DNA from: Vitrella brassicaformis CCMP3155
Lineage: Eukaryota; Protista; Chromerida
Direction of reading: 5' to 3'
NCBI GenBank assembly: GCA_001179505.1
Contig: CDMY01000033.1
Span: 1 to 64,000 of the forward strand
Length of the DNA: 64,000 bases
Shown here: positions 4,997-28,848 of the stretch, in pieces
How the letters are laid out: each line of letters starts with the position of its first letter
How positions within the stretch are numbered: the first letter of the stretch is position 1
Program-made: the position numbers and the translations under genes
The notes under the pieces: generated by a model
Told to the model about the DNA's origin: nothing
What the model saw: only the letters and a program-made list of their open reading frames with translations
Database searches by the model: none

Positions 4997-6367
4997 ACCT
5001 CGCTGCGGGCCTTCTGCCGTCTCTCCCCGTCCTCCGTCTCGTCCGTCTCGCCCGGTGGCGGCAGCGGCCGCTTCAATGGGCTCCTCAGGGTGGGGATGGT
5101 GGCAGCAGCGGCAGCGGTCGCAACGTCGGTCTCGGTGGCGGTGCCGAGGGCGGGGTTGGTGTTGTTGGTCGGCTCGGCGCCGGTCTGGGTGGCGGTGGTG
5201 GGGGCGGGGTGGGTGCCCATGGTTGTTGCCCTCCCTTGGATGAGGTCGATGTGAGCGAGGGAATTGAGCTCCTGCTCCTCTGTCAGCCCTGACGTCGGCT
5301 CGTCCCGGCGTGTGTCGTAGGCCGCGAAGATGGCGATCCGCTGGAAGGTGATGTGGGCCCCCCGCTGCTCACTCCCGCCCTGCTCGGTCTCGAAGTTGTA
5401 CACCACGGTCGTGATCCGCCCCCTGCGCTCTATCTCCTCCCGTTTCTCCGGCGTCTTGTACGACTCCGGCCCCTCGTTCCCTCTATGGTCGGTCCGCATG
5501 GTGAACACCTGCCCCACCACCATCCCCTCGGCGACGCGCCAGTCGTGGAAGCGCAGCGATGCGTGGCTGCCGTACACTGTCGTCACCACCCTCAGGGCTA
5601 TCTGGAGGGCGTCCTGGTGCGTCCACACCTCCCGTGGTAGCGGCGGCATCGCGCCCCCCTCCTGGATGGTGACGATGCTGCCGATGGTCACCGCTATCTT
5701 GTCGTCTAGGTCGGTGATGTGGTCCATGGGGATAACGGTGAGGCGCACGGTGGTGTGGGCGAGCCCCACCGCTTGGGCGCCCTGCACCTCAGCGCCGCCG
5801 TGGGGGATCTTGCCGTGGTATACGAGGTCGATTTTGCTCTTGGTCTCCGGCAACTCAGCCTGCATCAGGGGAAGGGAAGGAAAGGAGGGGTGGTCCGTAG
5901 GCGTGGTCTGAGCGTTATTCTCGTGTGCGCGTCTGTGTGCAGTGGTGTCGGCTTATGTTGGAGTACCCGTGGCTTTCGTAGACTCTCAGGTTGGTCAGCT
6001 TCTTGTGCCATCCAGTCTGGATGGACTCAGGCGCCCACTGCAGCTCGAGACGCGTGGTCTGGTCCTCTAGCACGCCATCTATGCGCGGCTGGTTGGGCAG
6101 CACACGCCCGCCGACGAGTGGTGCGGTGAGGATGGTGGTCTTCCCCCGTCGCTTCCACTCGAACATGCCGGTGGAGCACATCGCGAGTTTGTTCTCGGGG
6201 ATCTCGGTAATGGTGTGGTATGAGGGGCCGTAGCTGCAGTATGTGTGGGTGCGGCCGAGCTTCTGCCGTCCGATGGTGGTCTCATGCAGCACGCGGCGCT
6301 GTACAAACCCGAGGGAAAGGTCCGACCGGTGGCACCGGTCGGTCTTGCCGGTGCCGCGCAGCAACAT
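4458..6367 (-). CDS. Hypothetical protein (beta-rich N-terminal region, then Q/P/G low complexity); probably spliced or frame-disrupted
   Basis: ORFs 5915-6367 and 4555-5865 are separated by an intron-like pyrimidine tract ending TGCAG at about 5860. A more protein-like tail (AEAQELEGAALTAAVVDFAKKKKEQQQ) is in another frame ending at 4458. No family recognised. Confidence 0.4.
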
Positions 6368-6659
6368 CTCTTATCTCTTGCCTGAGAGGTTGTGGGGCAA
6401 CAAGGGGGGGCACGTGCATATGTTTTGGGCTGTGTGCGTGCAGGGGGGGTGGTCGCATACCTATCGCAGTTTTTTCGTGGTTTCTGGCTCGGCCATGTGG
6501 GACTCTCGGCTCCGAGGGGCGTAGCAGGCCTTCTCAAACAACGCGTTGCCCTCGATGGGACCCCACGCGAATGCGTGTCGTCGAACTGTTACGAGAGGGG
6601 AGGGCCCCCCGAGTAATGGGAGGCGATCGGCCAGACGGAGAGCATACGAAATTTCCGGG

Positions 6660-6959
6660 NNNNNNNNNNNNNNNNNNNNNNNNNNNNNNNNNNNNNNNNN
6701 NNNNNNNNNNNNNNNNNNNNNNNNNNNNNNNNNNNNNNNNNNNNNNNNNNNNNNNNNNNNNNNNNNNNNNNNNNNNNNNNNNNNNNNNNNNNNNNNNNNN
6801 NNNNNNNNNNNNNNNNNNNNNNNNNNNNNNNNNNNNNNNNNNNNNNNNNNNNNNNNNNNNNNNNNNNNNNNNNNNNNNNNNNNNNNNNNNNNNNNNNNNN
6901 NNNNNNNNNNNNNNNNNNNNNNNNNNNNNNNNNNNNNNNNNNNNNNNNNNNNNNNNNNN
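6660..6959. other. Assembly gap (300 N), poly-G on right edge
   Basis: N run. Confidence 1.
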
Positions 6960-16885: not shown

Positions 16886-17134
16886 GTATGTATGTGTATC
16901 TGTATCAGGGAGCCGGTTGGTTGGTTACATGGATGGACAGAGAGACACACACATGGTGCATTCAATCGATTGGCGTGTCCATTATGCAAACACAACAAGT
17001 CTGATTTGTTGACACAAGACCGATACTTGAGAATAAGTCCGATTCACACGAGAACGTGTTCAGATTCTGTGAACGACGTGCTTCTGACCCGCTCAGACGT
17101 TCGGTTCGCGCCTGCTGGCACATCCACACATAAA

Positions 17135-17822
17135 ATCCCCGATCGCTGCGCGCCCGCTCCCCACGTCGGCCGTCTCCTGCTGGTCCTGGAGGTGTGGATG
17201 CCGAATGCCGAATGCCGAGTCGCAATGCGATGGTGAGTAACTCTCACCTCGCCTTGCGACAGATCACCGTGAGAAACGCCCCCGGGCCCTGCACAGCTCA
17301 GGGCCTGGGGCAACGCCCAGGCGGAACCTCCGCAGAGGGGAGCTGGCGGGTGGGAAAAACCAAAAGATCATCGACACCACAATGCGCGTCCACACGCTGA
17401 CGTGGACGCGCCATCAACGCGAGCCCGGCATCTGGGCCAAGGATCGCCCGGCGGCTCGCACTCGCGAGCAGGCTGCGAGTGCGAGAGGGAGCCCTCACCG
17501 CTCACGCTGCGCTCGGGGGATCCTACGCCACCGGACGAAACGTCCTCAAGGCTCCGAATCCCCGATCGCTACGCGCCCGCTCCCCGGGTCGGCCGCCTCC
17601 TGCTAGTCCTGGGGATGCGGATGCCGAATGCCGAATGCCGAGTCGCAATGCGATGGTGAGTAACTCTCACCTCGCCTTGCGACAGATCACCGTGAGAAAC
17701 GCCCCCGGGCCCTGCACAGCTCAGGGCCTGGGGCAACGCCCAGGCGGAACCTCCGCAGAGGGGAGCTGGCGGGTGGGAAAAACCAAAAGATCATCGACAC
17801 CACAATGCGCGTCCACACGCTG
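17135..17822 (-). repeat. Tandem array of the YR-element terminal cassette (B-spacer-A-B-spacer-A partial; about 423-bp period)
   Basis: Matches the A and B repeats at 20289-20780 and 28299-28514, with subfamily-specific differences (AAAAGATCATCG; lacks one GAGGGAGTGC). Confidence 0.9.
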
Positions 17823-19544: not shown

Positions 19545-19988
19545 ACACATGCATTTCGCGAACGCGGCGAAAGTGTAGTGAGTTCCCCCAGCCCGACGGA
19601 GGGGAATTTCATGTGTTTAACTGCGACCCCGAAGGAGACTCAGTCATTTATAGATCTAACGGCACGCGTCCGGCGGACCGTCTCTCCCTTCCCTCCCAGC
19701 TCGAGTTCAGGGGATGAACTCGTCATCGTCGTCTGGCTTCTTCCGCTTGCGTGACCGGTGCCCTCCGGCCTTGTCCGTCTTTCTCGTCTTTGCCGGCTGT
19801 GGATCTTCGTCTGCCAGCTGCTTCTGGCGTCCCTTGGCTGGTCGTTTCTCGCTCCGTTGTGGCTGCGCCGGCTGGCTGCGTCGTGTGTCCCTAGGCACGC
19901 TGCCCCACATGGCGCCGTCGCGTCCGAGGGAGTTGTAGAAGCGGCGTGCGGTGTCGAAGGACGGCTTGCCGTACAGGCGCACCATGCT
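19545..19988 (-). mobile_element. Truncated, diverged second copy of the YR C-terminus and 3' UTR
   Basis: Homologous to about 20950-21388 (SMVRLYGKPSFDTARRFYNSLGRDGAMW...DDDDEFIP), with substitutions and UTR indels. Confidence 0.9.
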
Positions 19989-20288
19989 NNNNNNNNNNNN
20001 NNNNNNNNNNNNNNNNNNNNNNNNNNNNNNNNNNNNNNNNNNNNNNNNNNNNNNNNNNNNNNNNNNNNNNNNNNNNNNNNNNNNNNNNNNNNNNNNNNNN
20101 NNNNNNNNNNNNNNNNNNNNNNNNNNNNNNNNNNNNNNNNNNNNNNNNNNNNNNNNNNNNNNNNNNNNNNNNNNNNNNNNNNNNNNNNNNNNNNNNNNNN
20201 NNNNNNNNNNNNNNNNNNNNNNNNNNNNNNNNNNNNNNNNNNNNNNNNNNNNNNNNNNNNNNNNNNNNNNNNNNNNNNNNNNNNNNNN
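19989..20288. other. Assembly gap (300 N)
   Basis: N run. Confidence 1.
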
Positions 20289-20379
20289 ACCGTGAGAAAC
20301 GCCCCCGGGCCCTGCACAGCTCAGGGCCTGGGGCAACGCCCAGGCGGAACCTCCGCAGAGGGGAGCTGGCGGGTGGGAA

Positions 20380-20595
20380 AAAACCAAAACATCATCAACA
20401 CCACAATGCGCGTCCACACGCTGACGTGGACGCGCCATCAACGCGAGCCCGGCATCTGGGCCAAGGATCGCCCGGCGGCTCGCACTCGCGAGGGCAGGCT
20501 GCGAGTGCGAGAGGGAGTGCGAGAGGGAGCCCTCACCGCTCACGCTCCGCTCGGGGGATCCTACGCCACCGGACGAGACGTCCTCAAGGCTCCGA
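20380..20595 (-). repeat. Split direct repeat A2
   Basis: Near-identical to 28299-28514. Confidence 0.95.
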
Positions 20596-20780
20596 ATCCC
20601 CGATCGCTGCGCGCCCGCTCCCCGGGTTGGCTGTCTCCTGCTGGTCCTGGGGATGCGGATGCCGAATGCCGAATGCCGGGTCGCAATGCGATGGTGAGTA
20701 ACTCTCACCTCGCCTTGCGACAGATCACCGTGAGAAACGCCCCCGGGCCCTGCACAGCTCAGGGCCTGGGGCAACGCCCA
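20596..20780 (-). repeat. Split direct repeat B1
   Basis: Repeated at 20289-20342 (partial), 17135-17319 and 17558-17742. Confidence 0.93.
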
Positions 20781-21105
20781 CGTCCCACCTCGCCCGCCGG
20801 GCCGAGAGAAGGGAGGTGCGGTGGTGTGAGGCGTAGGAGAAGATGGAGGAGAGGTGTGGAGTAGAGAGTGACCGGCCTGGTCTGTTTGGTTAGTTATTGT
20901 GTTTTTGGCTGTAATCCCGGAGGGGATCCTGGGGGCCGATGGGGGCTTTGCATGCATTTCGCGAACGCGGCGAAAGTGGAATCAGCCCGAGGGGAAATTT
21001 CATGTGTTTAGCTGTGACCCCGAAGGGGATCGGTGAGTCATTTATTTAGATAGATCTTAACGGCACGTGTCACGGACCGTCTCTCCCTTCCCTCCCAGCT
21101 CGAGT

Positions 21106-22545
21106 TCAGGGGATGAACTCGTCATCGTCGTCTGGCTTCTTCCGTTTGCGTGGCCGGTGCCCTACGGCCTTGTCCATCTTGCTCGTCTTTGCCGGCCGTG
21201 GATCTTCGTCTGCCAGCTGCTTCTGGCGTCCCTTGGCTGGTCGTTTCTCGCTCCGTTGTGGCTGCGCCGGCTGGCTGCGTCGTGTGTCCCTCGGCACGCT
21301 GCCCCACATGGCGCCGTCGCGTCCGAGGGAGTTGTAGAAGCGGCGTGCGGTGTCGAAGGACGGCTTGCCGTACAGGCGCACCATGCTCGCGTCGATCCAG
21401 TCTGCGATGCGCTGGACGAAGTCCCTGGACGCCCCCTGCTCGAGCGCCCACGTCGCTCCTCCCTTACGGAAGGAGTGGGAGGCGAATCGGTCCAGCGGTG
21501 TGCCGCCGAATTCCTGCTGGTTCGCGTCGTGGAGAGCCTTCAGGGCCTTCCTGAGGGAGCTATTGAAGTGGTCGCCCGTCACAGGGTCGTCTCGCCACTC
21601 CCCGGCACTGACGTCCACGATGCGGAAGAGGTGCCCGGACCTCGGGGCCTTCTCCTTCCTGTCCAGGACCAGAACAGGGGAGGCGCATGTGGCTACTTGC
21701 CTCGTCTGGGCTTACAGAAAATCGCGAAGTGTCTGTCCCAGGTTAGGGAAGGCTGGGGGTTGCTCGGGGAGGGGCACAAGCAGGCCCTGTCCGTATGGGT
21801 CATTCTTCTGTTGTTTGACGTGCAGGCGGAAACCCTGGCCTCGCCCGAGGTCCGTCAGGTCGTCCCTCGTGAGTGCTGTCACCTCCGAGATCCGCCTCAT
21901 GCCGAAGAAGGCTATGAGGGCCATGATGCCGTTCCTCGTGGTGCCCAGCGCCCCATAGTTCAGCCAGTAGGGGATGAGCCGCTGGAGCACCTCCACTGGG
22001 AGTGGTTCCTTCGGCCGATACGAGGCGTCCAAGGTGCGGTGGAGCCCCTGCAGGAAGAGGCGCACCTGCGGCTCGGTGAAGGGGGGCGGGGGGTGGTTGT
22101 GCACCTTGTGCCACGCCTGAGTGGCCGACCGCAGCTGCTTCACCTGGGACCAGTGGCGGTCCTTTGCGAAGGCGGCGAAGGCCCAGATGGTCTTCTCGGG
22201 TGAGTCGAGTGGGAGGAATGACGGGAAGTCCTTCTCGGCGCGCTGCAGGACGCCCTCATACGCCTTCTGCGTCGATGGTGCCCAGACCGCCCCGAATGCC
22301 TTCCTGACCAGCTCGGCCACTTCCGACGCGTCGCTCGGTGCTTGGAGGCGGTCGCTTGACGTGCCTTTGACCGTGCAGAGGCACGGGATGGGGGCAGCGA
22401 GGGAGTGCGCCTGCATCTGGGTGGGTGCGATGGTGCCTGTCCCCCTGCAAACTGCGCACACCGGCGATGACCTGAGGGCGCATCCATGACACGGAGAGGG
22501 GAGTGATGAGCGACTGCATCTTGCTTCCTGGTATGCGTGCCGCAC
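21106..22545 (-). CDS. Tyrosine recombinase, two exons with a 57-nt intron at 21659-21715
   Basis: Catalytic set GMRRISE (R), QKND (K), SHSFRKGG (HxxR), IADW, VRLY (Y). The intron GTAAG...GGACAG contains the in-frame TAA. Confidence 0.9.
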
Positions 22546-22648
22546 TCATGCACATCGCCACGCACTTGCCCGGGCCCCTTATCGGTTGTATCATGTGTGT
22601 GTGCCTGCAGGTGGCTTGTCTGCCGCGTGTCCGGGCCATTGTGGCTGT

Positions 22649-22948
22649 NNNNNNNNNNNNNNNNNNNNNNNNNNNNNNNNNNNNNNNNNNNNNNNNNNNN
22701 NNNNNNNNNNNNNNNNNNNNNNNNNNNNNNNNNNNNNNNNNNNNNNNNNNNNNNNNNNNNNNNNNNNNNNNNNNNNNNNNNNNNNNNNNNNNNNNNNNNN
22801 NNNNNNNNNNNNNNNNNNNNNNNNNNNNNNNNNNNNNNNNNNNNNNNNNNNNNNNNNNNNNNNNNNNNNNNNNNNNNNNNNNNNNNNNNNNNNNNNNNNN
22901 NNNNNNNNNNNNNNNNNNNNNNNNNNNNNNNNNNNNNNNNNNNNNNNN
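22649..22948. other. Assembly gap (300 N) between overlapping contig ends
   Basis: The about 880 bp on either side are near-identical (offset 1180 = 880 + 300). Confidence 0.95.
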
Positions 22949-23725
22949 GAGGGGCACAAGCAGGCCCTGTCCGTATGGGTCATTCTTCTGTTGTTTGACG
23001 TGCAGGCGGAAACCCTGGCCTCGCCCGAGGTCCGTCAGGTCGTCCCTCGTGAGTGCTGTCACCTCCGAGATCCGCCTCATGCCGAAGAAGGCTATGAGGG
23101 CCATGATGCCGTTCCTCGTGGTGCCCAGCGCCCCATAGTTCAGCCAGAAGGGGATGAGCCGCTGCAGCACCTCCACTGGGAGTGGTTTCTTCGGCCGATA
23201 CGAGGCGTCCAAGGTGCGGTGGAGCCCCTGCAGGAAGAGGCGCACCTGCGGCTTGGTGAAGGGGGGCGGGGGGTGGTTGTGCACCTTGTGCCACGCCTGA
23301 GTGGCCGACCGCAGCTGCTTCACCTGGGACCAGTGGCGGTCCTTTGCGAAGGCGGCGAAGGCCCAGATGGTCTTCTCGGGTGAGTCGAGTGGGAGGAATG
23401 ACGGGAAGTCCTTCTCGGCGCGCTGCAGGACGCCCTCATACGCCTTCTGCGTCGATGGTGCCCAGACCGCCCCGAATGCCTTCCTGACCAGCTCGGCCAC
23501 TTCCGACGCGTCGCTCGGTGCTTGGAGGCGGTCGCTTGACGTGCCTTTGACCGTGCAGAGGCACGGGATGGGGGCAGCGAGGGAGTGCGCCTGCATCTGG
23601 GTGGGTGCGATGGTGCCTGTCCCCCTGCAAACTGCGCACACCGGCGATGACCTGAGGGCGCATCCATGACACGGAGAGGGGAGTGATGAGCGACTGCATC
23701 TTGCTTCCTGGTATGCGTGCCGCAC
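22949..23725 (-). CDS. Second copy of the YR 5' portion (4 SNPs versus 21771-22545)
   Basis: Same peptide with TKPQ/TEPQ, RPKK/RPKE and IPFW/IPYW differences. Confidence 0.8.
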
Positions 23726-23970
23726 TCATGCACATCGCCACGCACTTGCCCGGGCCCCTTATCGGTTGTATCATGTGTGTGTGCCTGCAGGTGGCTTGTC
23801 TGCCGCGTGTCCGGGCCATTGTGGCTGTCGTCACATTCACGTGCCATGCGCAGTCCCTGTGTGAGTATCATTGTGGCCATCGCCATACTCATGTGTCAGT
23901 CGCGGTTCATGCACGAGGTGCTGTGGCTACCGTCATGATTCCTATGTGACCTGCCGTCACCGCCAACACT

Positions 23971-25167
23971 CTACGACTCGCTGCCCCTCGTGTGTCCGGA
24001 CAGGTAAAGCACGACCATGGGGAACGGGGCGGGTTGGCGAAAGTGCCATTGTGCATCAGACGACTCCTGTGCTTCTGACGCTGTCAGTAGGGTGTTCACT
24101 ACTCGTGCTCCTCGGGCCCAGCTACGCGCGACCTTGAAGCGTGAGTGCCGACTGTAGGCGCTGCGGACGGCCTCTACGCGGTCGCGGTGGCCGACAACCA
24201 CGACCGTCTGACGGTGGTGGAAGAACCACTCCATGGCCGCATCCATGGCCGCCAGCGTCTCGGCGGGGGTGGGTGTGAAGACTGCTGGGCCCCCGGCGTG
24301 CATGCTGGGGCCTCCCTCGGCTGCTGCTGTGTGGTGTTGGGCCGTCAAGGCCAATTGAGGGGACGGGCAGAAGAAGTGGTGCTCGCAGCGGATATGCAGG
24401 CGCCTCTGCAGGGCTGACCACGACCTGGCCGTCAGGCGGTGGGGCACGTCGCTTGACGGCTCGGCCAACCGCGACTGGGCGTCGGCCGCCTGGTTGTGTT
24501 CGCCCGGTATGTGGTGGGCGAGCAGCTGACCCGCGTCCACCGCCCTGAAGAGCTCGCTCAGCACACGCATGGGGCCCGGGAAGGCGCTATGGCGGTGGTT
24601 GACCCAGCCTACTGCTGCCGCGTTGTCCGAGCGGATCAGAATGAGGTGCGACCCCCACTCTCTCGCCCATCGCTGGGCCGCAAACAGGATGGCGAGCAGC
24701 TCGCGGAAGTTGATGGAGGTGTGGTGGGGTGACAGCCGTGCTGACCACCTCCCACTGATCGACCGATCGCCCCACACGGCGCCCCACCCTGCGTCACTGG
24801 CGTCCGTGTACACGATCCGGATGGCGGGGTCGGTGGGGAGGGGGCGGGATGGGTGTTCCGCCAGGTGCGGGAAGAGCTGGAGGGGCCGCATGGCCGCCTC
24901 CCAGAGGAAGGCTCGGCCCTCGGCGGACCACTGCAGCTGGCGGCTGGGTGGAGTTGGCGCAGAGAGGAGGGCACGCCACCAGGCCACGTCTATCCACATG
25001 GGGCTATCCGGGGGAACCTTGACCGTCGCCCCCTGCAGCCGCGGGTAGGCGGAGCCCGCCTTCCGCCGCAGCTCGTCGTATCGGCGCGACGTCACCGTCC
25101 AGGCGTTGCGCAGCTTATGGGAGCCGAGGGGGTGCAGGATCGCCACGTGGTTCAGCCGACCTGTCAC
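23971..25167 (-). CDS. DIRS-type RNase H followed by a degenerate methyltransferase-like domain
   Basis: YTDASDAGWG, INFRELLAI, IRSDNAAAV, HIPGEHNQAADAQSR; the downstream region occupies the position of the DIRS MT domain. Confidence 0.88.
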   Translation of the reverse strand: MTGRLNHVAILHPLGSHKLRNAWTVTSRRYDELRRKAGSAYPRLQGATVKVPPDSPMWIDVAWWRALLSAPTPPSRQLQWSAEGRAFLWEAAMRPLQLFPHLAEHPSRPLPTDPAIRIVYTDASDAGWGAVWGDRSISGRWSARLSPHHTSINFRELLAILFAAQRWAREWGSHLILIRSDNAAAVGWVNHRHSAFPGPMRVLSELFRAVDAGQLLAHHIPGEHNQAADAQSRLAEPSSDVPHRLTARSWSALQRRLHIRCEHHFFCPSPQLALTAQHHTAAAEGGPSMHAGGPAVFTPTPAETLAAMDAAMEWFFHHRQTVVVVGHRDRVEAVRSAYSRHSRFKVARSWARGARVVNTLLTASEAQESSDAQWHFRQPAPFPMVVLYLSGHTRGSES

Positions 25168-26234
25168 CGCAGCAGCACCTGCAGGGGTATCTCGTCGCTG
25201 GTGCTTCGGTGGCTCTCGAGCTCGTCGAGTGAGGCGAGGGTGCGTCGACGCTTCGCCTCCGTGATGGAAATCATGCCCGTGAGTGAGTCGAAGACGATGC
25301 GTCCGAACTCCAGGGCCTGCTTGGGGCCCTCTGCCTTGCCCTCGTGCTCTTCGACGCCGCTATCGGCAATGCACGTCTGGAGCACCTGCTTGCCCTGGGC
25401 GCAGACCTCGAACGACGGCCCTATCACCAGCCAGTCATCGATATAGCAGAGGAAGGCAGCATCTGTCCGTTGGGACACGGCCTCTCTCACGGCCTCCATG
25501 CTCTTGACGAAGAGATATGGTGCGCTGCTGACCCCGAATGGGAGGTAGCGGTAGCGATAGAACTGCTGCGTCTGCGGATGTTGGAAGCCCAGCAGGTCGC
25601 ACTCTTCCGGCGCCACCGGCAGGTGCAGATACGCGTCTCGCACGTCGATCTTGGCCATGTAGCAGCCCCGCGAGATGGAGGCTATCGTGTCCGCCACTGA
25701 TGGCAGTGTGAAGTGGGGGGTCAGGAGGGAGGCGTTGAGGCCCGACGCCCTGCAGTCGAGGATCAGACGGACCTTCGTCTTGGTGTCGCCTGGGTCTCTC
25801 TTCTTCTCCACCGCCCCAAGCGGGTTGACGATGAAGGGGCGGTGGGTGCATGGCTCGACGAAGCCCTTGGTGATGAGACGCGTGAGTTCCGCCAGCACCG
25901 CCTCCCAGAAGTCGAAGAGCGAGTCGTAATTGCCCCGGTGCAAGGGTTTGAGTGGTCGAAAGATGAGAAGATCGACGCCTCTCTCCCAGTCGCTGACGAC
26001 CGTCTCATTGACGCCCCACGCCCGGGCTCTGGGTGGCCGCAGGCGGCCGCCTGCCGTCCAGGCTGAGATGCGGTGTGCTGTGGGCGGGTGCCACGACGAC
26101 CGCCCCAGCCCTTGAGCGAAGTTTTGGATGTGCATGCTGCTTTCCAGTGATTTCCGGAGTGCATCGTGCGTGCCGTCTGTGTCGTTGTTTGAGCCCGTGG
26201 ATTGCTCAGTCGATTGGATGGAAACTGAGGGCAC
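25164..26234 (-). CDS. DIRS-type reverse transcriptase, frameshifted from RNase H at about 25165
   Basis: KVRLILDCR, KIDVRDAYLHLP, YRYLPFGVSSAPYLF, YIDD. Confidence 0.93.
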   Translation of the reverse strand: MPSVSIQSTEQSTGSNNDTDGTHDALRKSLESSMHIQNFAQGLGRSSWHPPTAHRISAWTAGGRLRPPRARAWGVNETVVSDWERGVDLLIFRPLKPLHRGNYDSLFDFWEAVLAELTRLITKGFVEPCTHRPFIVNPLGAVEKKRDPGDTKTKVRLILDCRASGLNASLLTPHFTLPSVADTIASISRGCYMAKIDVRDAYLHLPVAPEECDLLGFQHPQTQQFYRYRYLPFGVSSAPYLFVKSMEAVREAVSQRTDAAFLCYIDDWLVIGPSFEVCAQGKQVLQTCIADSGVEEHEGKAEGPKQALEFGRIVFDSLTGMISITEAKRRRTLASLDELESHRSTSDEIPLQVLLR

Positions 26235-26380
26235 AGTGGACAGGCAGACGAGCCCGCATTCGTGTCATTAAAGCATAAAGCAATCGGTGTCTCGCCCCAT
26301 GCAGAGTCTCGCTGACGCACGACGACTGGCTCGACTGAGCTATTGGGCAATGCTACTCAGAGCCTAACAGATGTCGCTGA

Positions 26381-28208
26381 CTACAGGCCCGTGCGCTGCC
26401 TCTTACTCTGCCGCGGGGCGTTCGGGCAGTCTTTGCGCAGATGGTAGGCCGTGATGCCCAGTCCCTCGCAGACGGCGCAGGAGAGGATGATCGGCCGCGG
26501 GCACTTCGTGACGTGGTGCCCCTGGAGCTCTTTCGGGTCCGTGATCTTGCCCTGACGTGGGCAAACCCACACACACACACACGCAGCGATGAGACCAGGT
26601 GACGGTCTGCCTGTGCTGTGGTGCCTTGCGTACCTGGATGAGGTACTGCAGGCAGTTGTTGCATGAAAGAGTCTTGTCCACCGTGCGGCACGGGACTGCC
26701 ACCGGTTGGTGCACCGGGGGTGCCGCTGGCTGATGTGCCGGGGCGGCGGGGGGGCGCTGCTGGCCCGAGTGAGAGCTGGCCGCTACCGCGCGATTGACGA
26801 ATGCGGGGGCACTGCAGGTCAGACAGGGGAAGACAAATACATACACATACAATACACACCCTCATACACACTTCCATGCACACACACACACACACACCCC
26901 ACCCCACCCACCCCTCCCTTTTTCTCTTTCCTTACCCGTGTTGTGCCGATGCTGCTGCTGCTACTGCTGCTGCCGATGGTGCGGGTGGGGGTGGCTGTGC
27001 GGGGCTGAGGTGTGTGGGCTGGCGGATCTGCTGTTGTAGGATGCTGATCTGGCTGGTCACCTGCCGCAGTTCGCCGCTCAATGCCGGGACGGCGCGCGCG
27101 ACGAGGTAGAGGGGTGGCGGGGGGGCCACCCGCTGGCCAAGGTGCTTGGCCAGGGGCTCGCGCAGAATGTCGTCGACGCCGGGGAGCTCGAAGTATCCCC
27201 TGCTGCCGTCCCCCCCCCTAGCACCGGCATCTTGGCCTCCTGCGCCACGTCCTGCATTGTCTTGACGAATCGATGCACCTGCAGGTAGATCTGGCGGTCC
27301 TCTCCCTCGTCTGCCGTCGCCGTGTTGTCCTTCACGGTCATGAGCGCCGTCCACAGCTGTGATGAGGTGATGTCCTTCAGTTGGATGCGGGTGCTGCCCC
27401 CTTTGATGGTGAGCTGGTCGTCCGCGCCCCTCTCGAACGAGAGAGACGGAAGGGGGAGCTGGTCGGCGAGGGCGGTCACCATGCGCTGCGCCAGCTTGCT
27501 GCCCTCGGCGAATGGGGATTGGATCTGCTTGGTGAGCTGCTGCTGCGCCGCCTCGAAGGTCCCTATCCGCTGATCCAGCCCGCCCAGCCGCCCGCCGATG
27601 GACACCATGCCCTGCGTCATCTGTTGCTTCAAGTCGTCGAGCTCCCTCGCCAACATCTCCAACTTCTGGCACCGCTCGATGTCTCCATCCGCCCCTCCGC
27701 CCCCTCCCCCCAGATCCCCCCGCCCCCTCCCCTGCTGCCGGTCCTCCTCCTGGATCTCGTCCTCTCCCTCCTCCAGATCTACCTCTACAGCCTCCGCCCG
27801 CCTCGACTTTTTCTTCTTCTTTTTCTTCTTCTCGGCCCCGTCCTTTGCCTTGGCCTTGGCCCTGGACGCTGCCGGTGTCCCCGCGCCCCCCTCGCCCTGG
27901 ATCTCCTCATCCTCCATGTCGGCTGCGATGTCATCGTCCGCGAAGCCCTGTCGCCTCTGGGCGTCGATGATCTCGTCCTCTATGTGGGAGATCTGGTCCT
28001 GCAGCAGCTGCTCCAGCTCCTCCTCGCCGAGATCGAGGTCGCGCAGCTGGTTATTGAGGGCGGCCTTCAGATGCTGCCCAACACGCACCCGCTGGCCAAG
28101 ATCTTCCAGATCACCCAAGCTAAAGAAGGCCGGTAGGTCGCCGGTGTCGACGCCAGACCAGTCGAAATTGGCCTTCTTGAATTTGAAGGCGTTGCGGGTT
28201 CTCGCCAT
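26381..28208 (-). CDS. Gag-like protein, 3 exons (28208-26936, 26811-26634, 26551-26381), two C-terminal CCHC-like knuckles; one indel in a G9 run at 27210-27218
   Basis: ATG directly downstream of A1. Introns GTAAG..CTGCAG (124 nt) and GTACGC..GTCAG (82 nt) join in frame to give CNNC...HHVTKC and CAVC...HLRKDC. Confidence 0.82.
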
Positions 28209-28298
28209 GGTGGGGAAAGGCCACGCCGCTGACGACGGAAAGGGATGGGAAAGGGTGGCTACGGGGAGGCCGGGGTGGCTGCGGTGGATGCGACCTTC

Positions 28299-28514
28299 AA
28301 AACCAAAACATCATCAACACCACAGTGCGCGTCCACACGCGGACGTGGACGCGCCATCAACGCGAGCCCGGCATCTGGGCCAAGGATCGCCCGGCGGCTC
28401 GCACTCGCGAGGGCAGGCTGCGAGTGCGAGAGGGAGTGCGAGAGGGAGCCCTCACCGCTCACGCTCCGCTCGGGGGATCCTACGCCACCGAACGAGACGT
28501 CCTCAAGGCTCCGA
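28299..28514 (-). repeat. Split direct repeat A1 (5' end of the YR element)
   Basis: Near-identical to A2; similarity ends abruptly at 28514. Confidence 0.95.
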
Positions 28515-28848
28515 GAGTTCCTGCATCCTGCGGCCACAGAGTCACATCGTCAACGACACGAGAATGGCCGGCGCCGGTCGGATGCTGGTGCCTTTTGGCC
28601 GGCCCTTCCGCCACAATGGATAGAGAGGCGTCAGGGTCTGTGTGGATCGGTGGCGGTGGACGCCCCCCTCGCTCTCTCCCGCGCGTTGTTGTCGCGTGCG
28701 TCGGTTCGGAACGGGATTCACACATTAAGTATTTCAAGGCTTGTGTGTGCCAAGTTGTTCGCCAGCCCCCACACCACAAATCCAATGACCCCGCGACTCG
28801 CCATATATCCCTGGTCAACAGATGCATCCCTCTGCTACACCCTGATAG

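What the first reader, a model, noticed from the sequence alone, without database searches (positions are those of the whole stretch)
26225..26406. Gag-Pol fusion apparently made by alternative splicing in a YR retrotransposon
Seen: 26 nt before the gag stop there is a strong donor (CGG CAG A|GTAAGA, intron start 26406). A pyrimidine-rich acceptor (...TGTCCACTGTGCCCTCAG|TT, intron end 26225) opens the RT ORF, whose listed start is a non-ATG codon inside that acceptor. Removing the 182-nt intron joins A+TT (Ile) and puts the gag zinc knuckles in frame with RT (...CPNAPRQ-I-SIQSTEQ...). Retention gives Gag only. Inference: the Gag:Gag-Pol ratio could be set by splice-site choice rather than by ribosomal frameshifting or overlapping ORFs, which would be an unusual expression strategy for DIRS-order elements.
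Basis: partly seen in the sequence, partly recalled or inferred. Interest (0 to 1): 0.82.

Follow-up and report, generated by a model that had tools for sequence, protein, structure and literature searches.

The report
Likely spliced Gag-Pol in YR retrotransposon
A broken jumping gene in the alga Vitrella brassicaformis has an intron-like 182-base spacer between its capsid gene and its copying-enzyme gene; removing it would fuse the two proteins, and related elements are built the same way, but the only transcript seen keeps the spacer.

Summary
On the minus strand, donor CAG A|GTAAGA (G at 26406) and acceptor CCCTCAG|TT (G at 26225) bound 182 nt that hold the gag stop. Both sites are phase 1, and A+TT gives Ile.

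The host is Vitrella brassicaformis CCMP3155. The element (about 28514 to 20289) is a tyrosine-recombinase (YR, DIRS-order) retrotransposon with A...B-A-B terminal repeats. This copy is dead, with two frameshifts.

For the splice:
- These are the only good donor and acceptor candidates, and their phases match (chance about 0.01).
- The sister copy on scaffold C863 keeps both sites.
- The public gene model CEM35723.1 uses this same intron on C863.
- Gag and pol do not overlap.
- Pol has no usable ATG.
- A phase-1 donor/acceptor pair at the gag stop recurs in two other Vitrella families and two environmental relatives. Three of those four donors are weak.

Against: the one transcript contig across the donor has the upstream 82-nt gag intron spliced but runs through this donor unspliced. 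No RNA covers pol. Three related families have a Met just after the acceptor. One family does not fit.

Verdict: a facultative gag-pol intron is likely (about 0.6) but the junction is unproven. Plant Ogre elements are the precedent. An unchecked first-reader note (s1-197189) raised the same idea on other DNA of this genome.

The parts
20289..28514 (-). Whole YR (DIRS-order, split-direct-repeat type) retrotransposon copy. It is interrupted by a 300-N gap at 22649-22948 and abuts a gap at 19989-20288.
   Evidence: Repeat families D2, D5 and D6, N runs, RT, RNase H and YR homology.
28299..28514 (-). 5' terminal repeat A1. It is 99% identical to A2 at 20380-20595. B modules lie at 20727-20826 and 20289-20388, giving the order A...B-A-B.
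   Evidence: the repeat finder families D2, D5, D6.
26936..28208 (-). gag exon 1, starting at ATG 28208 (MARTRNAF...). It is coiled-coil-like. This copy has a 1-nt deletion in a G run near 27209 that shifts the frame.
   Evidence: ORF list, translations. About half of the DNA-read depth carries one extra base behind 27209 (table 4). The continuous reading is seen in P0001.
26812..26935 (-). gag intron A, 124 nt, CGG|GTAAGG...CCTGCAG|T, phase 2, GC 0.50. Predicted only.
   Evidence: Sequence and frame change between the open stretches. No RNA contig could be laid across it, because the tool skipped the repeat at 26869-27003.
26634..26811 (-). gag exon 2, holding the first half of zinc knuckle 1 (...SCNNCLQYLIQ).
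   Evidence: Translation; covered by the X1 transcript contig.
26552..26633 (-). gag intron B, 82 nt, CAG|GTACGC...CGTCAG|G, phase 0. It is spliced in RNA.
   Evidence: X1 record 1 (331 nt, no mismatches) joins 26550/26633 with GT..AG ends. No DNA run shows that joint (tables 5 and 8).
26407..26551 (-). gag exon 3: the rest of knuckle 1 (HHVTKC) and knuckle 2 (CAVCEGLGITAYHLRKDC), then PNAPRQ.
   Evidence: Translation.
26225..26406 (-). The finding: a putative facultative intron C, 182 nt, phase 1, GC 0.57 against 0.63-0.69 in the exons. It contains the gag tail SKRQRTGL, the stop TAG at 26383-26381, and four ATGs.
   Evidence: Both sites are conserved in copy C863, where the spacer is 183 nt. 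The same intron is used by gene model P0001 = CEM35723.1.
26364..26776 (-). Extent of the only transcript contig over the donor. Intron B is removed and intron C is retained for 43 nt. The contig ends 17 nt after the TGTAG that overlaps the gag stop.
   Evidence: read laying X1 record 1 (table 8).
25167..26224 (-). pol exon: N-terminal region and reverse transcriptase. The first in-frame ATG is Met34 at 26135-26133. The frame breaks at about 25170-25206.
   Evidence: Pfam RVT_1 E=8.4e-16, ATG map, frame switch with no room for an intron.
23974..25359 (-). Continuation of pol in another frame (RNase H-like region).
   Evidence: Pfam RT_RNaseH E=7.2e-5, below the curated cut-off. tblastn of the C1057 pol maps to 25170-24286.
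21322..22458 (-). Tyrosine recombinase region. A second partial image lies at 22949-23638, beside the assembly gap.
   Evidence: tblastn with the C499 YR ORF gives 30% identity over 387 aa, E=4e-50. That ORF hits Pfam Phage_integrase at 8e-8.

Best explanation
The 182 nt at 26406-26225 are a facultative spliceosomal intron of a YR retrotransposon family of Vitrella brassicaformis.

The proposed mechanism is as follows. The element's pre-mRNA carries host-type introns. Introns A and B must be removed to build the gag zinc knuckles. If intron C is retained, translation stops 8 codons later and yields Gag alone. If intron C is removed (phase 1, A+TT = Ile), the last zinc knuckle is joined in frame to the pol N-terminus and a Gag-Pol fusion is made. 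The weak donor (A rather than G at -1) would make retention the majority outcome, giving excess Gag. Fully unspliced RNA would serve as the template for reverse transcription, which is why the copies keep their introns.

Shown here:
- the sites, their phase and their conservation;
- splicing of intron B;
- existence of the intron-C-retained RNA;
- absence of any other simple route to Pol.

Inferred:
- that intron C is ever spliced;
- that the Gag to Gag-Pol ratio is set this way;
- that unspliced RNA is the replication template.

The window copy is defective, so this describes the family when it was active.
For: 1. The exact sites and phase are present, they are the only candidates, and the chance estimate is about 0.01.
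2. The second genomic copy (C863, 89-95% identical) keeps GTAAGA and YCAG. A 1-nt indel inside the spacer is harmless to an intron.
3. Public model CEM35723.1 on C863 reads ...DCPNAPRP-I-SIQSTEQ..., which is this intron. That annotation was made by Augustus with RNA-seq intron hints (PMC4501334).
4. Element RNA is handled by the spliceosome. Intron B is removed in an RNA contig and in no DNA run.
5. The same contig retains intron C, which is the predicted Gag-only form.
6. Other routes are closed. There is a 117-nt gap with stops between the gag stop and the opening of the pol frame, and a second stop follows in the gag frame. Five ATGs precede Met34, one of them opening an overlapping out-of-frame ORF.
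7. The region between the acceptor and Met34 aligns with pol N-termini of other families, so it appears to be coding.
8. The architecture recurs:
   - C1057: AGG|GTACGT with the TAA stop inside the donor, acceptor CTCTGCAG|GC, both phase 1.
   - C929: CAG|GCAAGT (GC donor, phase 1), acceptor GGTCAG|TT (phase 1).
   - Environmental contig L022: CTG|GCAAGT and CTTCAG|AC, both phase 1.
   - Environmental contig L024: AAT|GTGATG inside the last Cys codon and ACCAG|GC, both phase 1, so T+GC restores Cys.
   - The window element, L022 and L024 have no Met before conserved pol.
9. The spacer's GC content is lower than that of the exons, as for introns A and B.
Against: - No transcript with the junction was found. 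The only contig over the donor is unspliced. X1 has zero coverage over 2.4 kb of pol while covering about 58% of gag.
- No protein fragment containing the pol N-terminus exists in the 5.8-billion-protein collection in the 59-187 aa range. None related to P0001 exists at 315-1001 aa.
- C1057, C929 and C499 each have a Met 0-4 codons after the candidate acceptor, which would also suit an independent Pol start.
- The C620/C610 family has an in-frame stop directly before its pol ATG (TAAATG) and no compatible pair.
- In C929 and L022 the in-frame solution needs a GC donor, while a GT four bases downstream is out of frame.
- C499 offers many acceptors, so its compatibility means little.
- Among the 150 best RT relatives, no YR-type protein has a zinc-knuckle gag contiguous with RT.
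- A gene prediction is not an observation.
- Both copies of this family are dead.
Confidence: 0.6

Rival explanations
1. The spacer is a plain inter-ORF region. Pol is made independently of Gag, from its own transcript (internal promoter) or by internal initiation or reinitiation at Met34 (MHIQNF) or a non-AUG codon. The GT and AG are fortuitous, and the gene predictor simply exploited them.
For: No junction RNA was seen and the only contig is unspliced. Separate gag and pol ORFs are the rule among the 150 nearest RT relatives. Three related families have a Met at the start of pol. C620 clearly starts pol at an ATG that follows a stop.
Against: Met34 is preceded by five ATGs, one of which opens an overlapping out-of-frame ORF. 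A dedicated 5' end would therefore have to fall in a 28-nt window. Met34 is not conserved in other families, while sequence upstream of it is. The window element, L022 and L024 have no Met before conserved pol. The unique donor and acceptor in matching phase have a chance of about 0.01 and recur in independent families.
Confidence: 0.2
2. The spacer is a real intron, but its purpose is not a fusion. The acceptor just upstream of pol serves a subgenomic pol mRNA, by splicing from an upstream leader or gag donor as in foamy-virus pol or retroviral env. Alternatively it brings the gag stop next to the pol start for termination-reinitiation.
For: An AG lies 8-12 nt before a pol ATG in C1057, C929 and C620. 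C620 has an adjacent stop and start, TAAATG.
Against: The window family, L022 and L024 have no ATG after the acceptor. The donors of introns A (phase 2) and B (phase 0) are out of phase with the phase-1 acceptor. The donor sits at the very end of gag in five families, which a leader-to-pol splice does not need.
Confidence: 0.08
3. Gag-only mRNA is made by cleavage and polyadenylation just after the gag stop. The RNA seen is that short transcript, and pol expression is controlled at the level of transcription read-through rather than by splice choice.
For: X1 covers four stretches of gag and nothing downstream of 26364. The contig ends 17 nt after a TGTAG that overlaps the stop.
Against: The contig carries no A tail. 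Depth is only about 5, and contig ends are not RNA ends, as the tool itself warns. The poly(A) signal of Vitrella was not established here. This reading is compatible with, and could work alongside, a facultative intron, as in plant Ty1/Copia shGAG RNA (PMC5580714).
Confidence: 0.12

Closest known systems
Ogre (Ty3/gypsy) LTR retrotransposons of legumes (Neumann 2003 and Steinbauerova 2008, as summarised in PMC6317226 and PMC3735527)
   Same: Two ORFs are separated by a short non-coding spacer (about 274 bp on average in Ogre). [quoted passage not shown] Unspliced RNA gives only the upstream product.
   Different: Ogre is an LTR element with integrase and protease, and its intron lies between gag-pro and RT-RH-INT. 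Its splicing has been shown experimentally. Here the element is a tyrosine-recombinase element without a protease, it lives in a chromerid alga, it has further constitutive introns inside gag, and the junction has not been observed.
copia, BARE1 and Arabidopsis Ty1/Copia shGAG RNA (PMC3735527; PMC5580714)
   Same: Alternative splicing, and in Arabidopsis coupled premature termination, sets the excess of Gag over Pol. Unspliced RNA is reserved for replication.
   Different: The logic is opposite. In those elements splicing produces the Gag-only RNA from a single gag-pol ORF. Here retention would give Gag and splicing would give Gag-Pol.
DIRS-1, PAT-like, Ngaro and VIPER YR retrotransposons (PMC7192593; PMC3266345)
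   Same: The gene set is gag, RT, RNase H and a tyrosine recombinase. The split direct repeats are in the order A...B-A-B, as in PAT-like elements and SymbioDIRS (PMC5890265).
   Different: Described members use separate or overlapping ORFs. In the papers I could search, none reports spliceosomal introns or splicing between gag and pol; the DIRS1-like overview has no word beginning 'splic'. Its authors set aside algal and protist copies as having 'too many frameshifts or indels', some of which might in fact be introns (my inference).
Spumavirus pol and retroviral env subgenomic mRNAs (established textbook knowledge, not checked here)
   Same: An acceptor just upstream of a downstream gene's ATG, as seen in C1057, C929 and C620.
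   Different: Those mRNAs give a free downstream protein from its own AUG. The window family has no such AUG.

Membership tests
DIRS-order (tyrosine-recombinase) retrotransposon | Reverse transcriptase of the LTR/DIRS type | tested here: met
   Pfam RVT_1 E=8.4e-16, 58.7 bits against a cut-off of 29.6. The nearest relatives are YR-element RTs.
DIRS-order (tyrosine-recombinase) retrotransposon | Tyrosine recombinase in place of a DDE integrase | tested here: met
   Window 22458-21322 matches the C499 YR ORF at E=4e-50. That ORF hits Pfam Phage_integrase at 8.2e-8, 32.7 bits against a cut-off of 27.1. The window ORFs themselves gave no direct Pfam hit.
DIRS-order (tyrosine-recombinase) retrotransposon | RNase H downstream of RT | tested here: inconclusive
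   RT_RNaseH E=7.2e-5, 23.3 bits, just under the cut-off of 24.8. The C499 relative passes with 26.5 bits.
PAT-like / split-direct-repeat type YR element | Termini arranged A1 ... B1-A2-B2 | tested here: met
   A is at 28299-28514 and 20380-20595 (99% identical). B is at 20727-20826 and 20289-20388.
PAT-like / split-direct-repeat type YR element | Methyltransferase domain present (DIRS1/PAT) or absent (Ngaro/VIPER) | not tested
   The 3' half is broken by a gap and duplicated segments, so I did not look for it.
Ogre-type facultative gag/pol intron | Upstream and downstream ORFs separated by a spacer with stops, with no overlap | tested here: met
   The gag stop is at 26383-26381 and the pol frame opens at 26264. 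Stops occur in between.
Ogre-type facultative gag/pol intron | Canonical splice sites whose use fuses the ORFs in frame | tested here: met
   GT and AG are both phase 1 and are the only candidates. They are kept in copy C863.
Ogre-type facultative gag/pol intron | Spliced junction present in transcripts | tested here: inconclusive
One RNA run of low depth shows an unspliced contig across the donor and no coverage of pol. Contigs show presence, not absence.
Ogre-type facultative gag/pol intron | Unspliced form coexists (partial splicing) | tested here: met
   X1 record 1 has intron B removed and intron C retained.
Programmed ribosomal frameshift or stop-codon readthrough between gag and pol | Overlapping ORFs, or an in-frame pol directly after a single stop | tested here: not met
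   There is no overlap, pol is in a different frame, and a second stop lies 8 codons after the first in the gag frame.

The most novel reading that the evidence does not exclude
A phase-1 intron between the last gag zinc knuckle and pol is an old, conserved feature of a clade of YR retrotransposons in chromerids and other protists. Its deliberately weak donors (a non-G at -1, GC-AG donors, or a donor inside the last Cys codon) tune the Gag to Gag-Pol ratio. Cleavage and polyadenylation inside the retained intron may reinforce this. Such elements would then be retrotransposons whose whole expression programme depends on host splicing while their replication depends on escaping it.
Probability: 0.3. 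Interest if true: 0.78.

Novelty: new variant of a known kind. Interest (0 to 1): 0.6.

Why it matters
How DIRS-order elements make Pol, and how they balance it against Gag, is not settled; the papers I could search describe only separate or overlapping ORFs. A splice-controlled Gag-Pol would give that order a concrete, testable expression mechanism. It would extend the Ogre strategy from plant LTR elements to a protease-less, tyrosine-recombinase element in an alveolate. It would also sharpen an open question: how can a retrotransposon keep several spliceosomal introns through RNA-mediated copying? That requires sorting unspliced RNA to replication and spliced RNA to translation. A practical consequence is that 'frameshifted' YR elements in algal and protist genomes may be intron-bearing rather than decayed.

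Tried and rejected
- RNA evidence. 
- Protein searches for transcript-derived fragments found nothing. The pol N-terminus in the 59-187 aa range gave no hit. P0001 at 315-1001 aa found only itself.
- The annotated model at C1057 (P0032) starts inside RT, so it says nothing about that element's junction.
- The look-up of encoding contigs could not return P0001's locus. I mapped P0001 onto C863 by tblastn instead.
- Copy comparison. Only two copies of this family are in the assembly, and C1057 and C499 are single-copy. A multi-copy conservation test was therefore impossible. Between the acceptor and Met34 the two copies differ by 3 synonymous and 2 non-synonymous changes, too few to use.
- Frameshift and readthrough were rejected, because the ORFs do not overlap and lie in different frames.
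- An intron at the RT/RNase H frame change near 25170-25206 was rejected, because only about 35 nt are available. It is a frameshift.
- The contigs L023, L025, L026 and L027 showed no zinc-knuckle gag end and were not used.
- Step left out. I did not build, translate or search the joined (spliced) sequence. Exons were handled one by one, by reference.
Full report
**What is there**

The window is scaffold C33 of a 72,700,666-base, 1064-scaffold assembly. A predicted protein 93% identical to the pol N-terminus is CEM35723.1 of Vitrella brassicaformis CCMP3155. The genome paper gives the same size and scaffold number (PMC4501334).

A retrotransposon lies on the minus strand from about 28514 to 20289. 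Its parts are:
- a 216-nt repeat at both ends (28299-28514 and 20380-20595, 99% identical) and a second module flanking the 3' copy, giving the order A...B-A-B;
- a gag with a coiled-coil-like first exon and two CX2C...HX4C knuckles;
- a reverse transcriptase (Pfam RVT_1, 8.4e-16) and a weak RNase H hit;
- a tyrosine recombinase, recognised through a related element whose ORF hits Phage_integrase.

It is therefore a DIRS-order element of the split-direct-repeat type. The 3' half is interrupted by 300-N gaps and near-identical duplicated segments.

**The observation**

The donor is CAG A|GTAAGA with G at 26406. The acceptor is CCCTCAG|TT with G at 26225. The spacer is 182 nt. The gag stop TAG at 26383-26381 lies inside the spacer. 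Both sites are phase 1, and A+TT is Ile between ...CPNAPRQ and SIQSTEQ.... I checked this from the two separate translations.

A blind enumeration found one donor candidate in the last 46 nt of gag and one pyrimidine-rich YAG between the gag stop and conserved pol. Their phases match. From the density of such sites in the window, a strong donor, a strong acceptor and a matching phase together have a probability of about 0.01.

**State of the copy**

Only two copies of this family are in the assembly, this one and a truncated one on C863. The window copy is dead.
- A 1-nt deletion in a G run near 27209 breaks gag. About half of the DNA-read depth, and the C863-based protein, carry the extra base (table 4).
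- The RT to RNase H transition shifts frame within about 35 nt near 25170-25206, which is too short for an intron.

C863 has an 11-nt insertion in knuckle 2 and a 1-nt deletion. Anything said about function therefore applies to the family when it was active.

**RNA**

One run (X1) behaves as RNA. A 331-nt contig with no mismatches joins 26550 to 26633, skipping 82 nt with GT..AG ends, and none of three DNA runs shows that joint. Gag intron B (26633-26552) is therefore really spliced.

The same contig runs 43 nt past the proposed donor, to 26364, so intron C is retained in that molecule. X1 covers four stretches of gag (28279 down to 26364) and nothing in 2.4 kb of pol. This is what a Gag-only, intron-retained mRNA would look like. 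It is no evidence for the fusion, and depth is only about 5. The contig ends 17 nt after a TGTAG that overlaps the stop. That may hint at polyadenylation inside the spacer, but contig ends are not RNA ends.

**Other routes to Pol**

- Gag and pol do not overlap. The pol frame opens at 26264, which is 117 nt after the stop. They are in different frames, and a second stop follows in the gag frame. Frameshifting and readthrough are therefore out.
- The first in-frame ATG of pol is Met34 (26135). It is preceded by five ATGs, four of them inside the spacer. The one at 26164 opens an overlapping out-of-frame ORF.
- Met34 is not conserved in other families, whereas the residues before it align with their pol N-termini.

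**Independent support**

1. The C863 copy keeps GTAAGA and the CAG acceptor. Its spacer is 183 nt.
2. The public Augustus model on C863 reads ...DCPNAPRP-I-SIQSTEQ.... By tblastn its exons end at the same donor and acceptor. That annotation used RNA-seq intron hints, but it remains a prediction.
3. Other YR families show the same design, tabulated below. In each of these four the donor sits within 3 codons of the gag stop, both sites are phase 1, and the acceptor is the strong one before pol.

| Element | Source | Donor | Acceptor | Note |
|---|---|---|---|---|
| C1057 | Vitrella, 41% identical pol | AGG\|GTACGT | CTCTGCAG\|GC | The TAA stop lies inside the donor; G+GC = Gly |
| C929 | Vitrella | CAG\|GCAAGT (consensus GC-type donor) | GGTCAG\|TT | Both sites kept in a second copy on C508 |
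| L022 | environmental contig | CTG\|GCAAGT | CTTCAG\|AC | No Met before conserved pol |
| L024 | environmental contig | AAT\|GTGATG | ACCAG\|GC | The donor cuts the last Cys codon and T+GC restores Cys; no Met before conserved pol |

Three of these four donors are weak, as is the window's, which fits partial splicing. The spacer's GC content (0.57) is below that of the exons (0.63-0.69), like introns A (0.50) and B (0.61).

**What does not fit**

- C1057, C929 and C499 have a Met 0-4 codons after the candidate acceptor, which would suit a free Pol.
- C620/C610 has an in-frame stop immediately before its pol ATG (TAAATG; TAG in the other copy) and no compatible pair.
- In C929 and L022 a GT four bases after the GC donor would be out of frame.
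- C499's best donor is phase 0, and many acceptors are available, so its compatibility is uninformative.
- No YR-type relative among the 150 best RT matches has gag and RT in one ORF.
- No transcript-derived protein fragments of this family were found.

**Verdict**

The most likely reading (about 0.6) is a facultative intron. Retention gives Gag. Removal gives a Gag-Pol fusion. Unspliced RNA is the replication template, which explains why copies keep introns A, B and C. The rivals are an independent pol start (0.2), a splice that serves a pol-only or reinitiation mRNA (0.08), and control mainly by polyadenylation after gag (0.12). The last of these is compatible with the main reading.

**Comparison with known systems**

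The mechanism is the one shown for Ogre elements in pea and Medicago, where the spacer between the gag-pro and RT ORFs is an intron removed from a subset of transcripts (PMC6317226; PMC3735527). It is the mirror image of copia, BARE1 and Arabidopsis Ty1/Copia elements, where splicing makes the Gag-only RNA.

For DIRS-order elements I found no report of splicing between gag and pol in the searchable library. This is therefore a new variant of a known kind rather than something categorically new.

Other first-stage notes on this genome describe introns in retrotransposon gag genes, and one (s1-197189) raises the same Gag-Pol idea on another piece of DNA. They are unchecked leads, not support. 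I examined the related families independently.

Noticed in passing
window 26364-28279 (minus strand): The probable RNA run covers four stretches of gag only (27896-28279, 27340-27539, 27004-27112, 26364-26776) and nothing of pol. The last contig ends 17 nt after a TGTAG overlapping the gag stop, which could be a poly(A) site inside the retained intron.
   Followed up: partly
window about 27209 and 25170-25206: There are two frameshifts in this copy: a 1-nt deletion in a G run of gag, where about half of the DNA-read depth carries the extra base, and a shift at a CTGCTGCGG stretch between RT and RNase H. The copy is nevertheless the one whose sequence matches the transcript contigs exactly.
   Followed up: yes
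window 21769-22068 = 22949-23248 and 19674-19973 = 21073-21372; also 17054-17822: Near-identical (98-99%) 300-nt duplicates flank the 300-N gaps in the 3' half of the element. Extra tandem copies of the terminal-repeat modules lie at 17054-17822. These are probably assembly collapse or scaffolding of a repeat, or a second partial element.
   Followed up: no
L008 (scaffold C620) 1189-1470; L011 (C610): A related YR family has its pol ATG directly after an in-frame stop (CGG TAA ATG; TAG ACG in the other copy) and no phase-compatible gag-pol splice pair. This may be a different strategy, such as termination-reinitiation or an independent pol start.
   Followed up: partly
L015 (scaffold C929) 6309-6317, about 6494-6502, about 6700-6708: The donor-like motif CAGGCAAGT occurs three times in the gag-pol spacer. 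The first two sit in a duplicated segment of about 45 nt from the end of gag. The gag frame reopens after three stops and stays open to the pol exon.
   Followed up: no
L024 (Logan SRR31860987) 1065 and 1250: In a low-GC environmental relative the candidate donor lies inside the last Cys codon of the second zinc knuckle (T|GT), and the acceptor supplies GC. Splicing would keep the Cys and fuse gag to a pol that has no start codon of its own.
   Followed up: partly
Read laying depth, window 23900-28600: DNA runs of only about 100 million letters give word depths of 20-90 over the element, far above what a 72.7-Mb genome would get. Minority variants match the C863 copy. The family may have more copies than the two assembled.
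   Followed up: no
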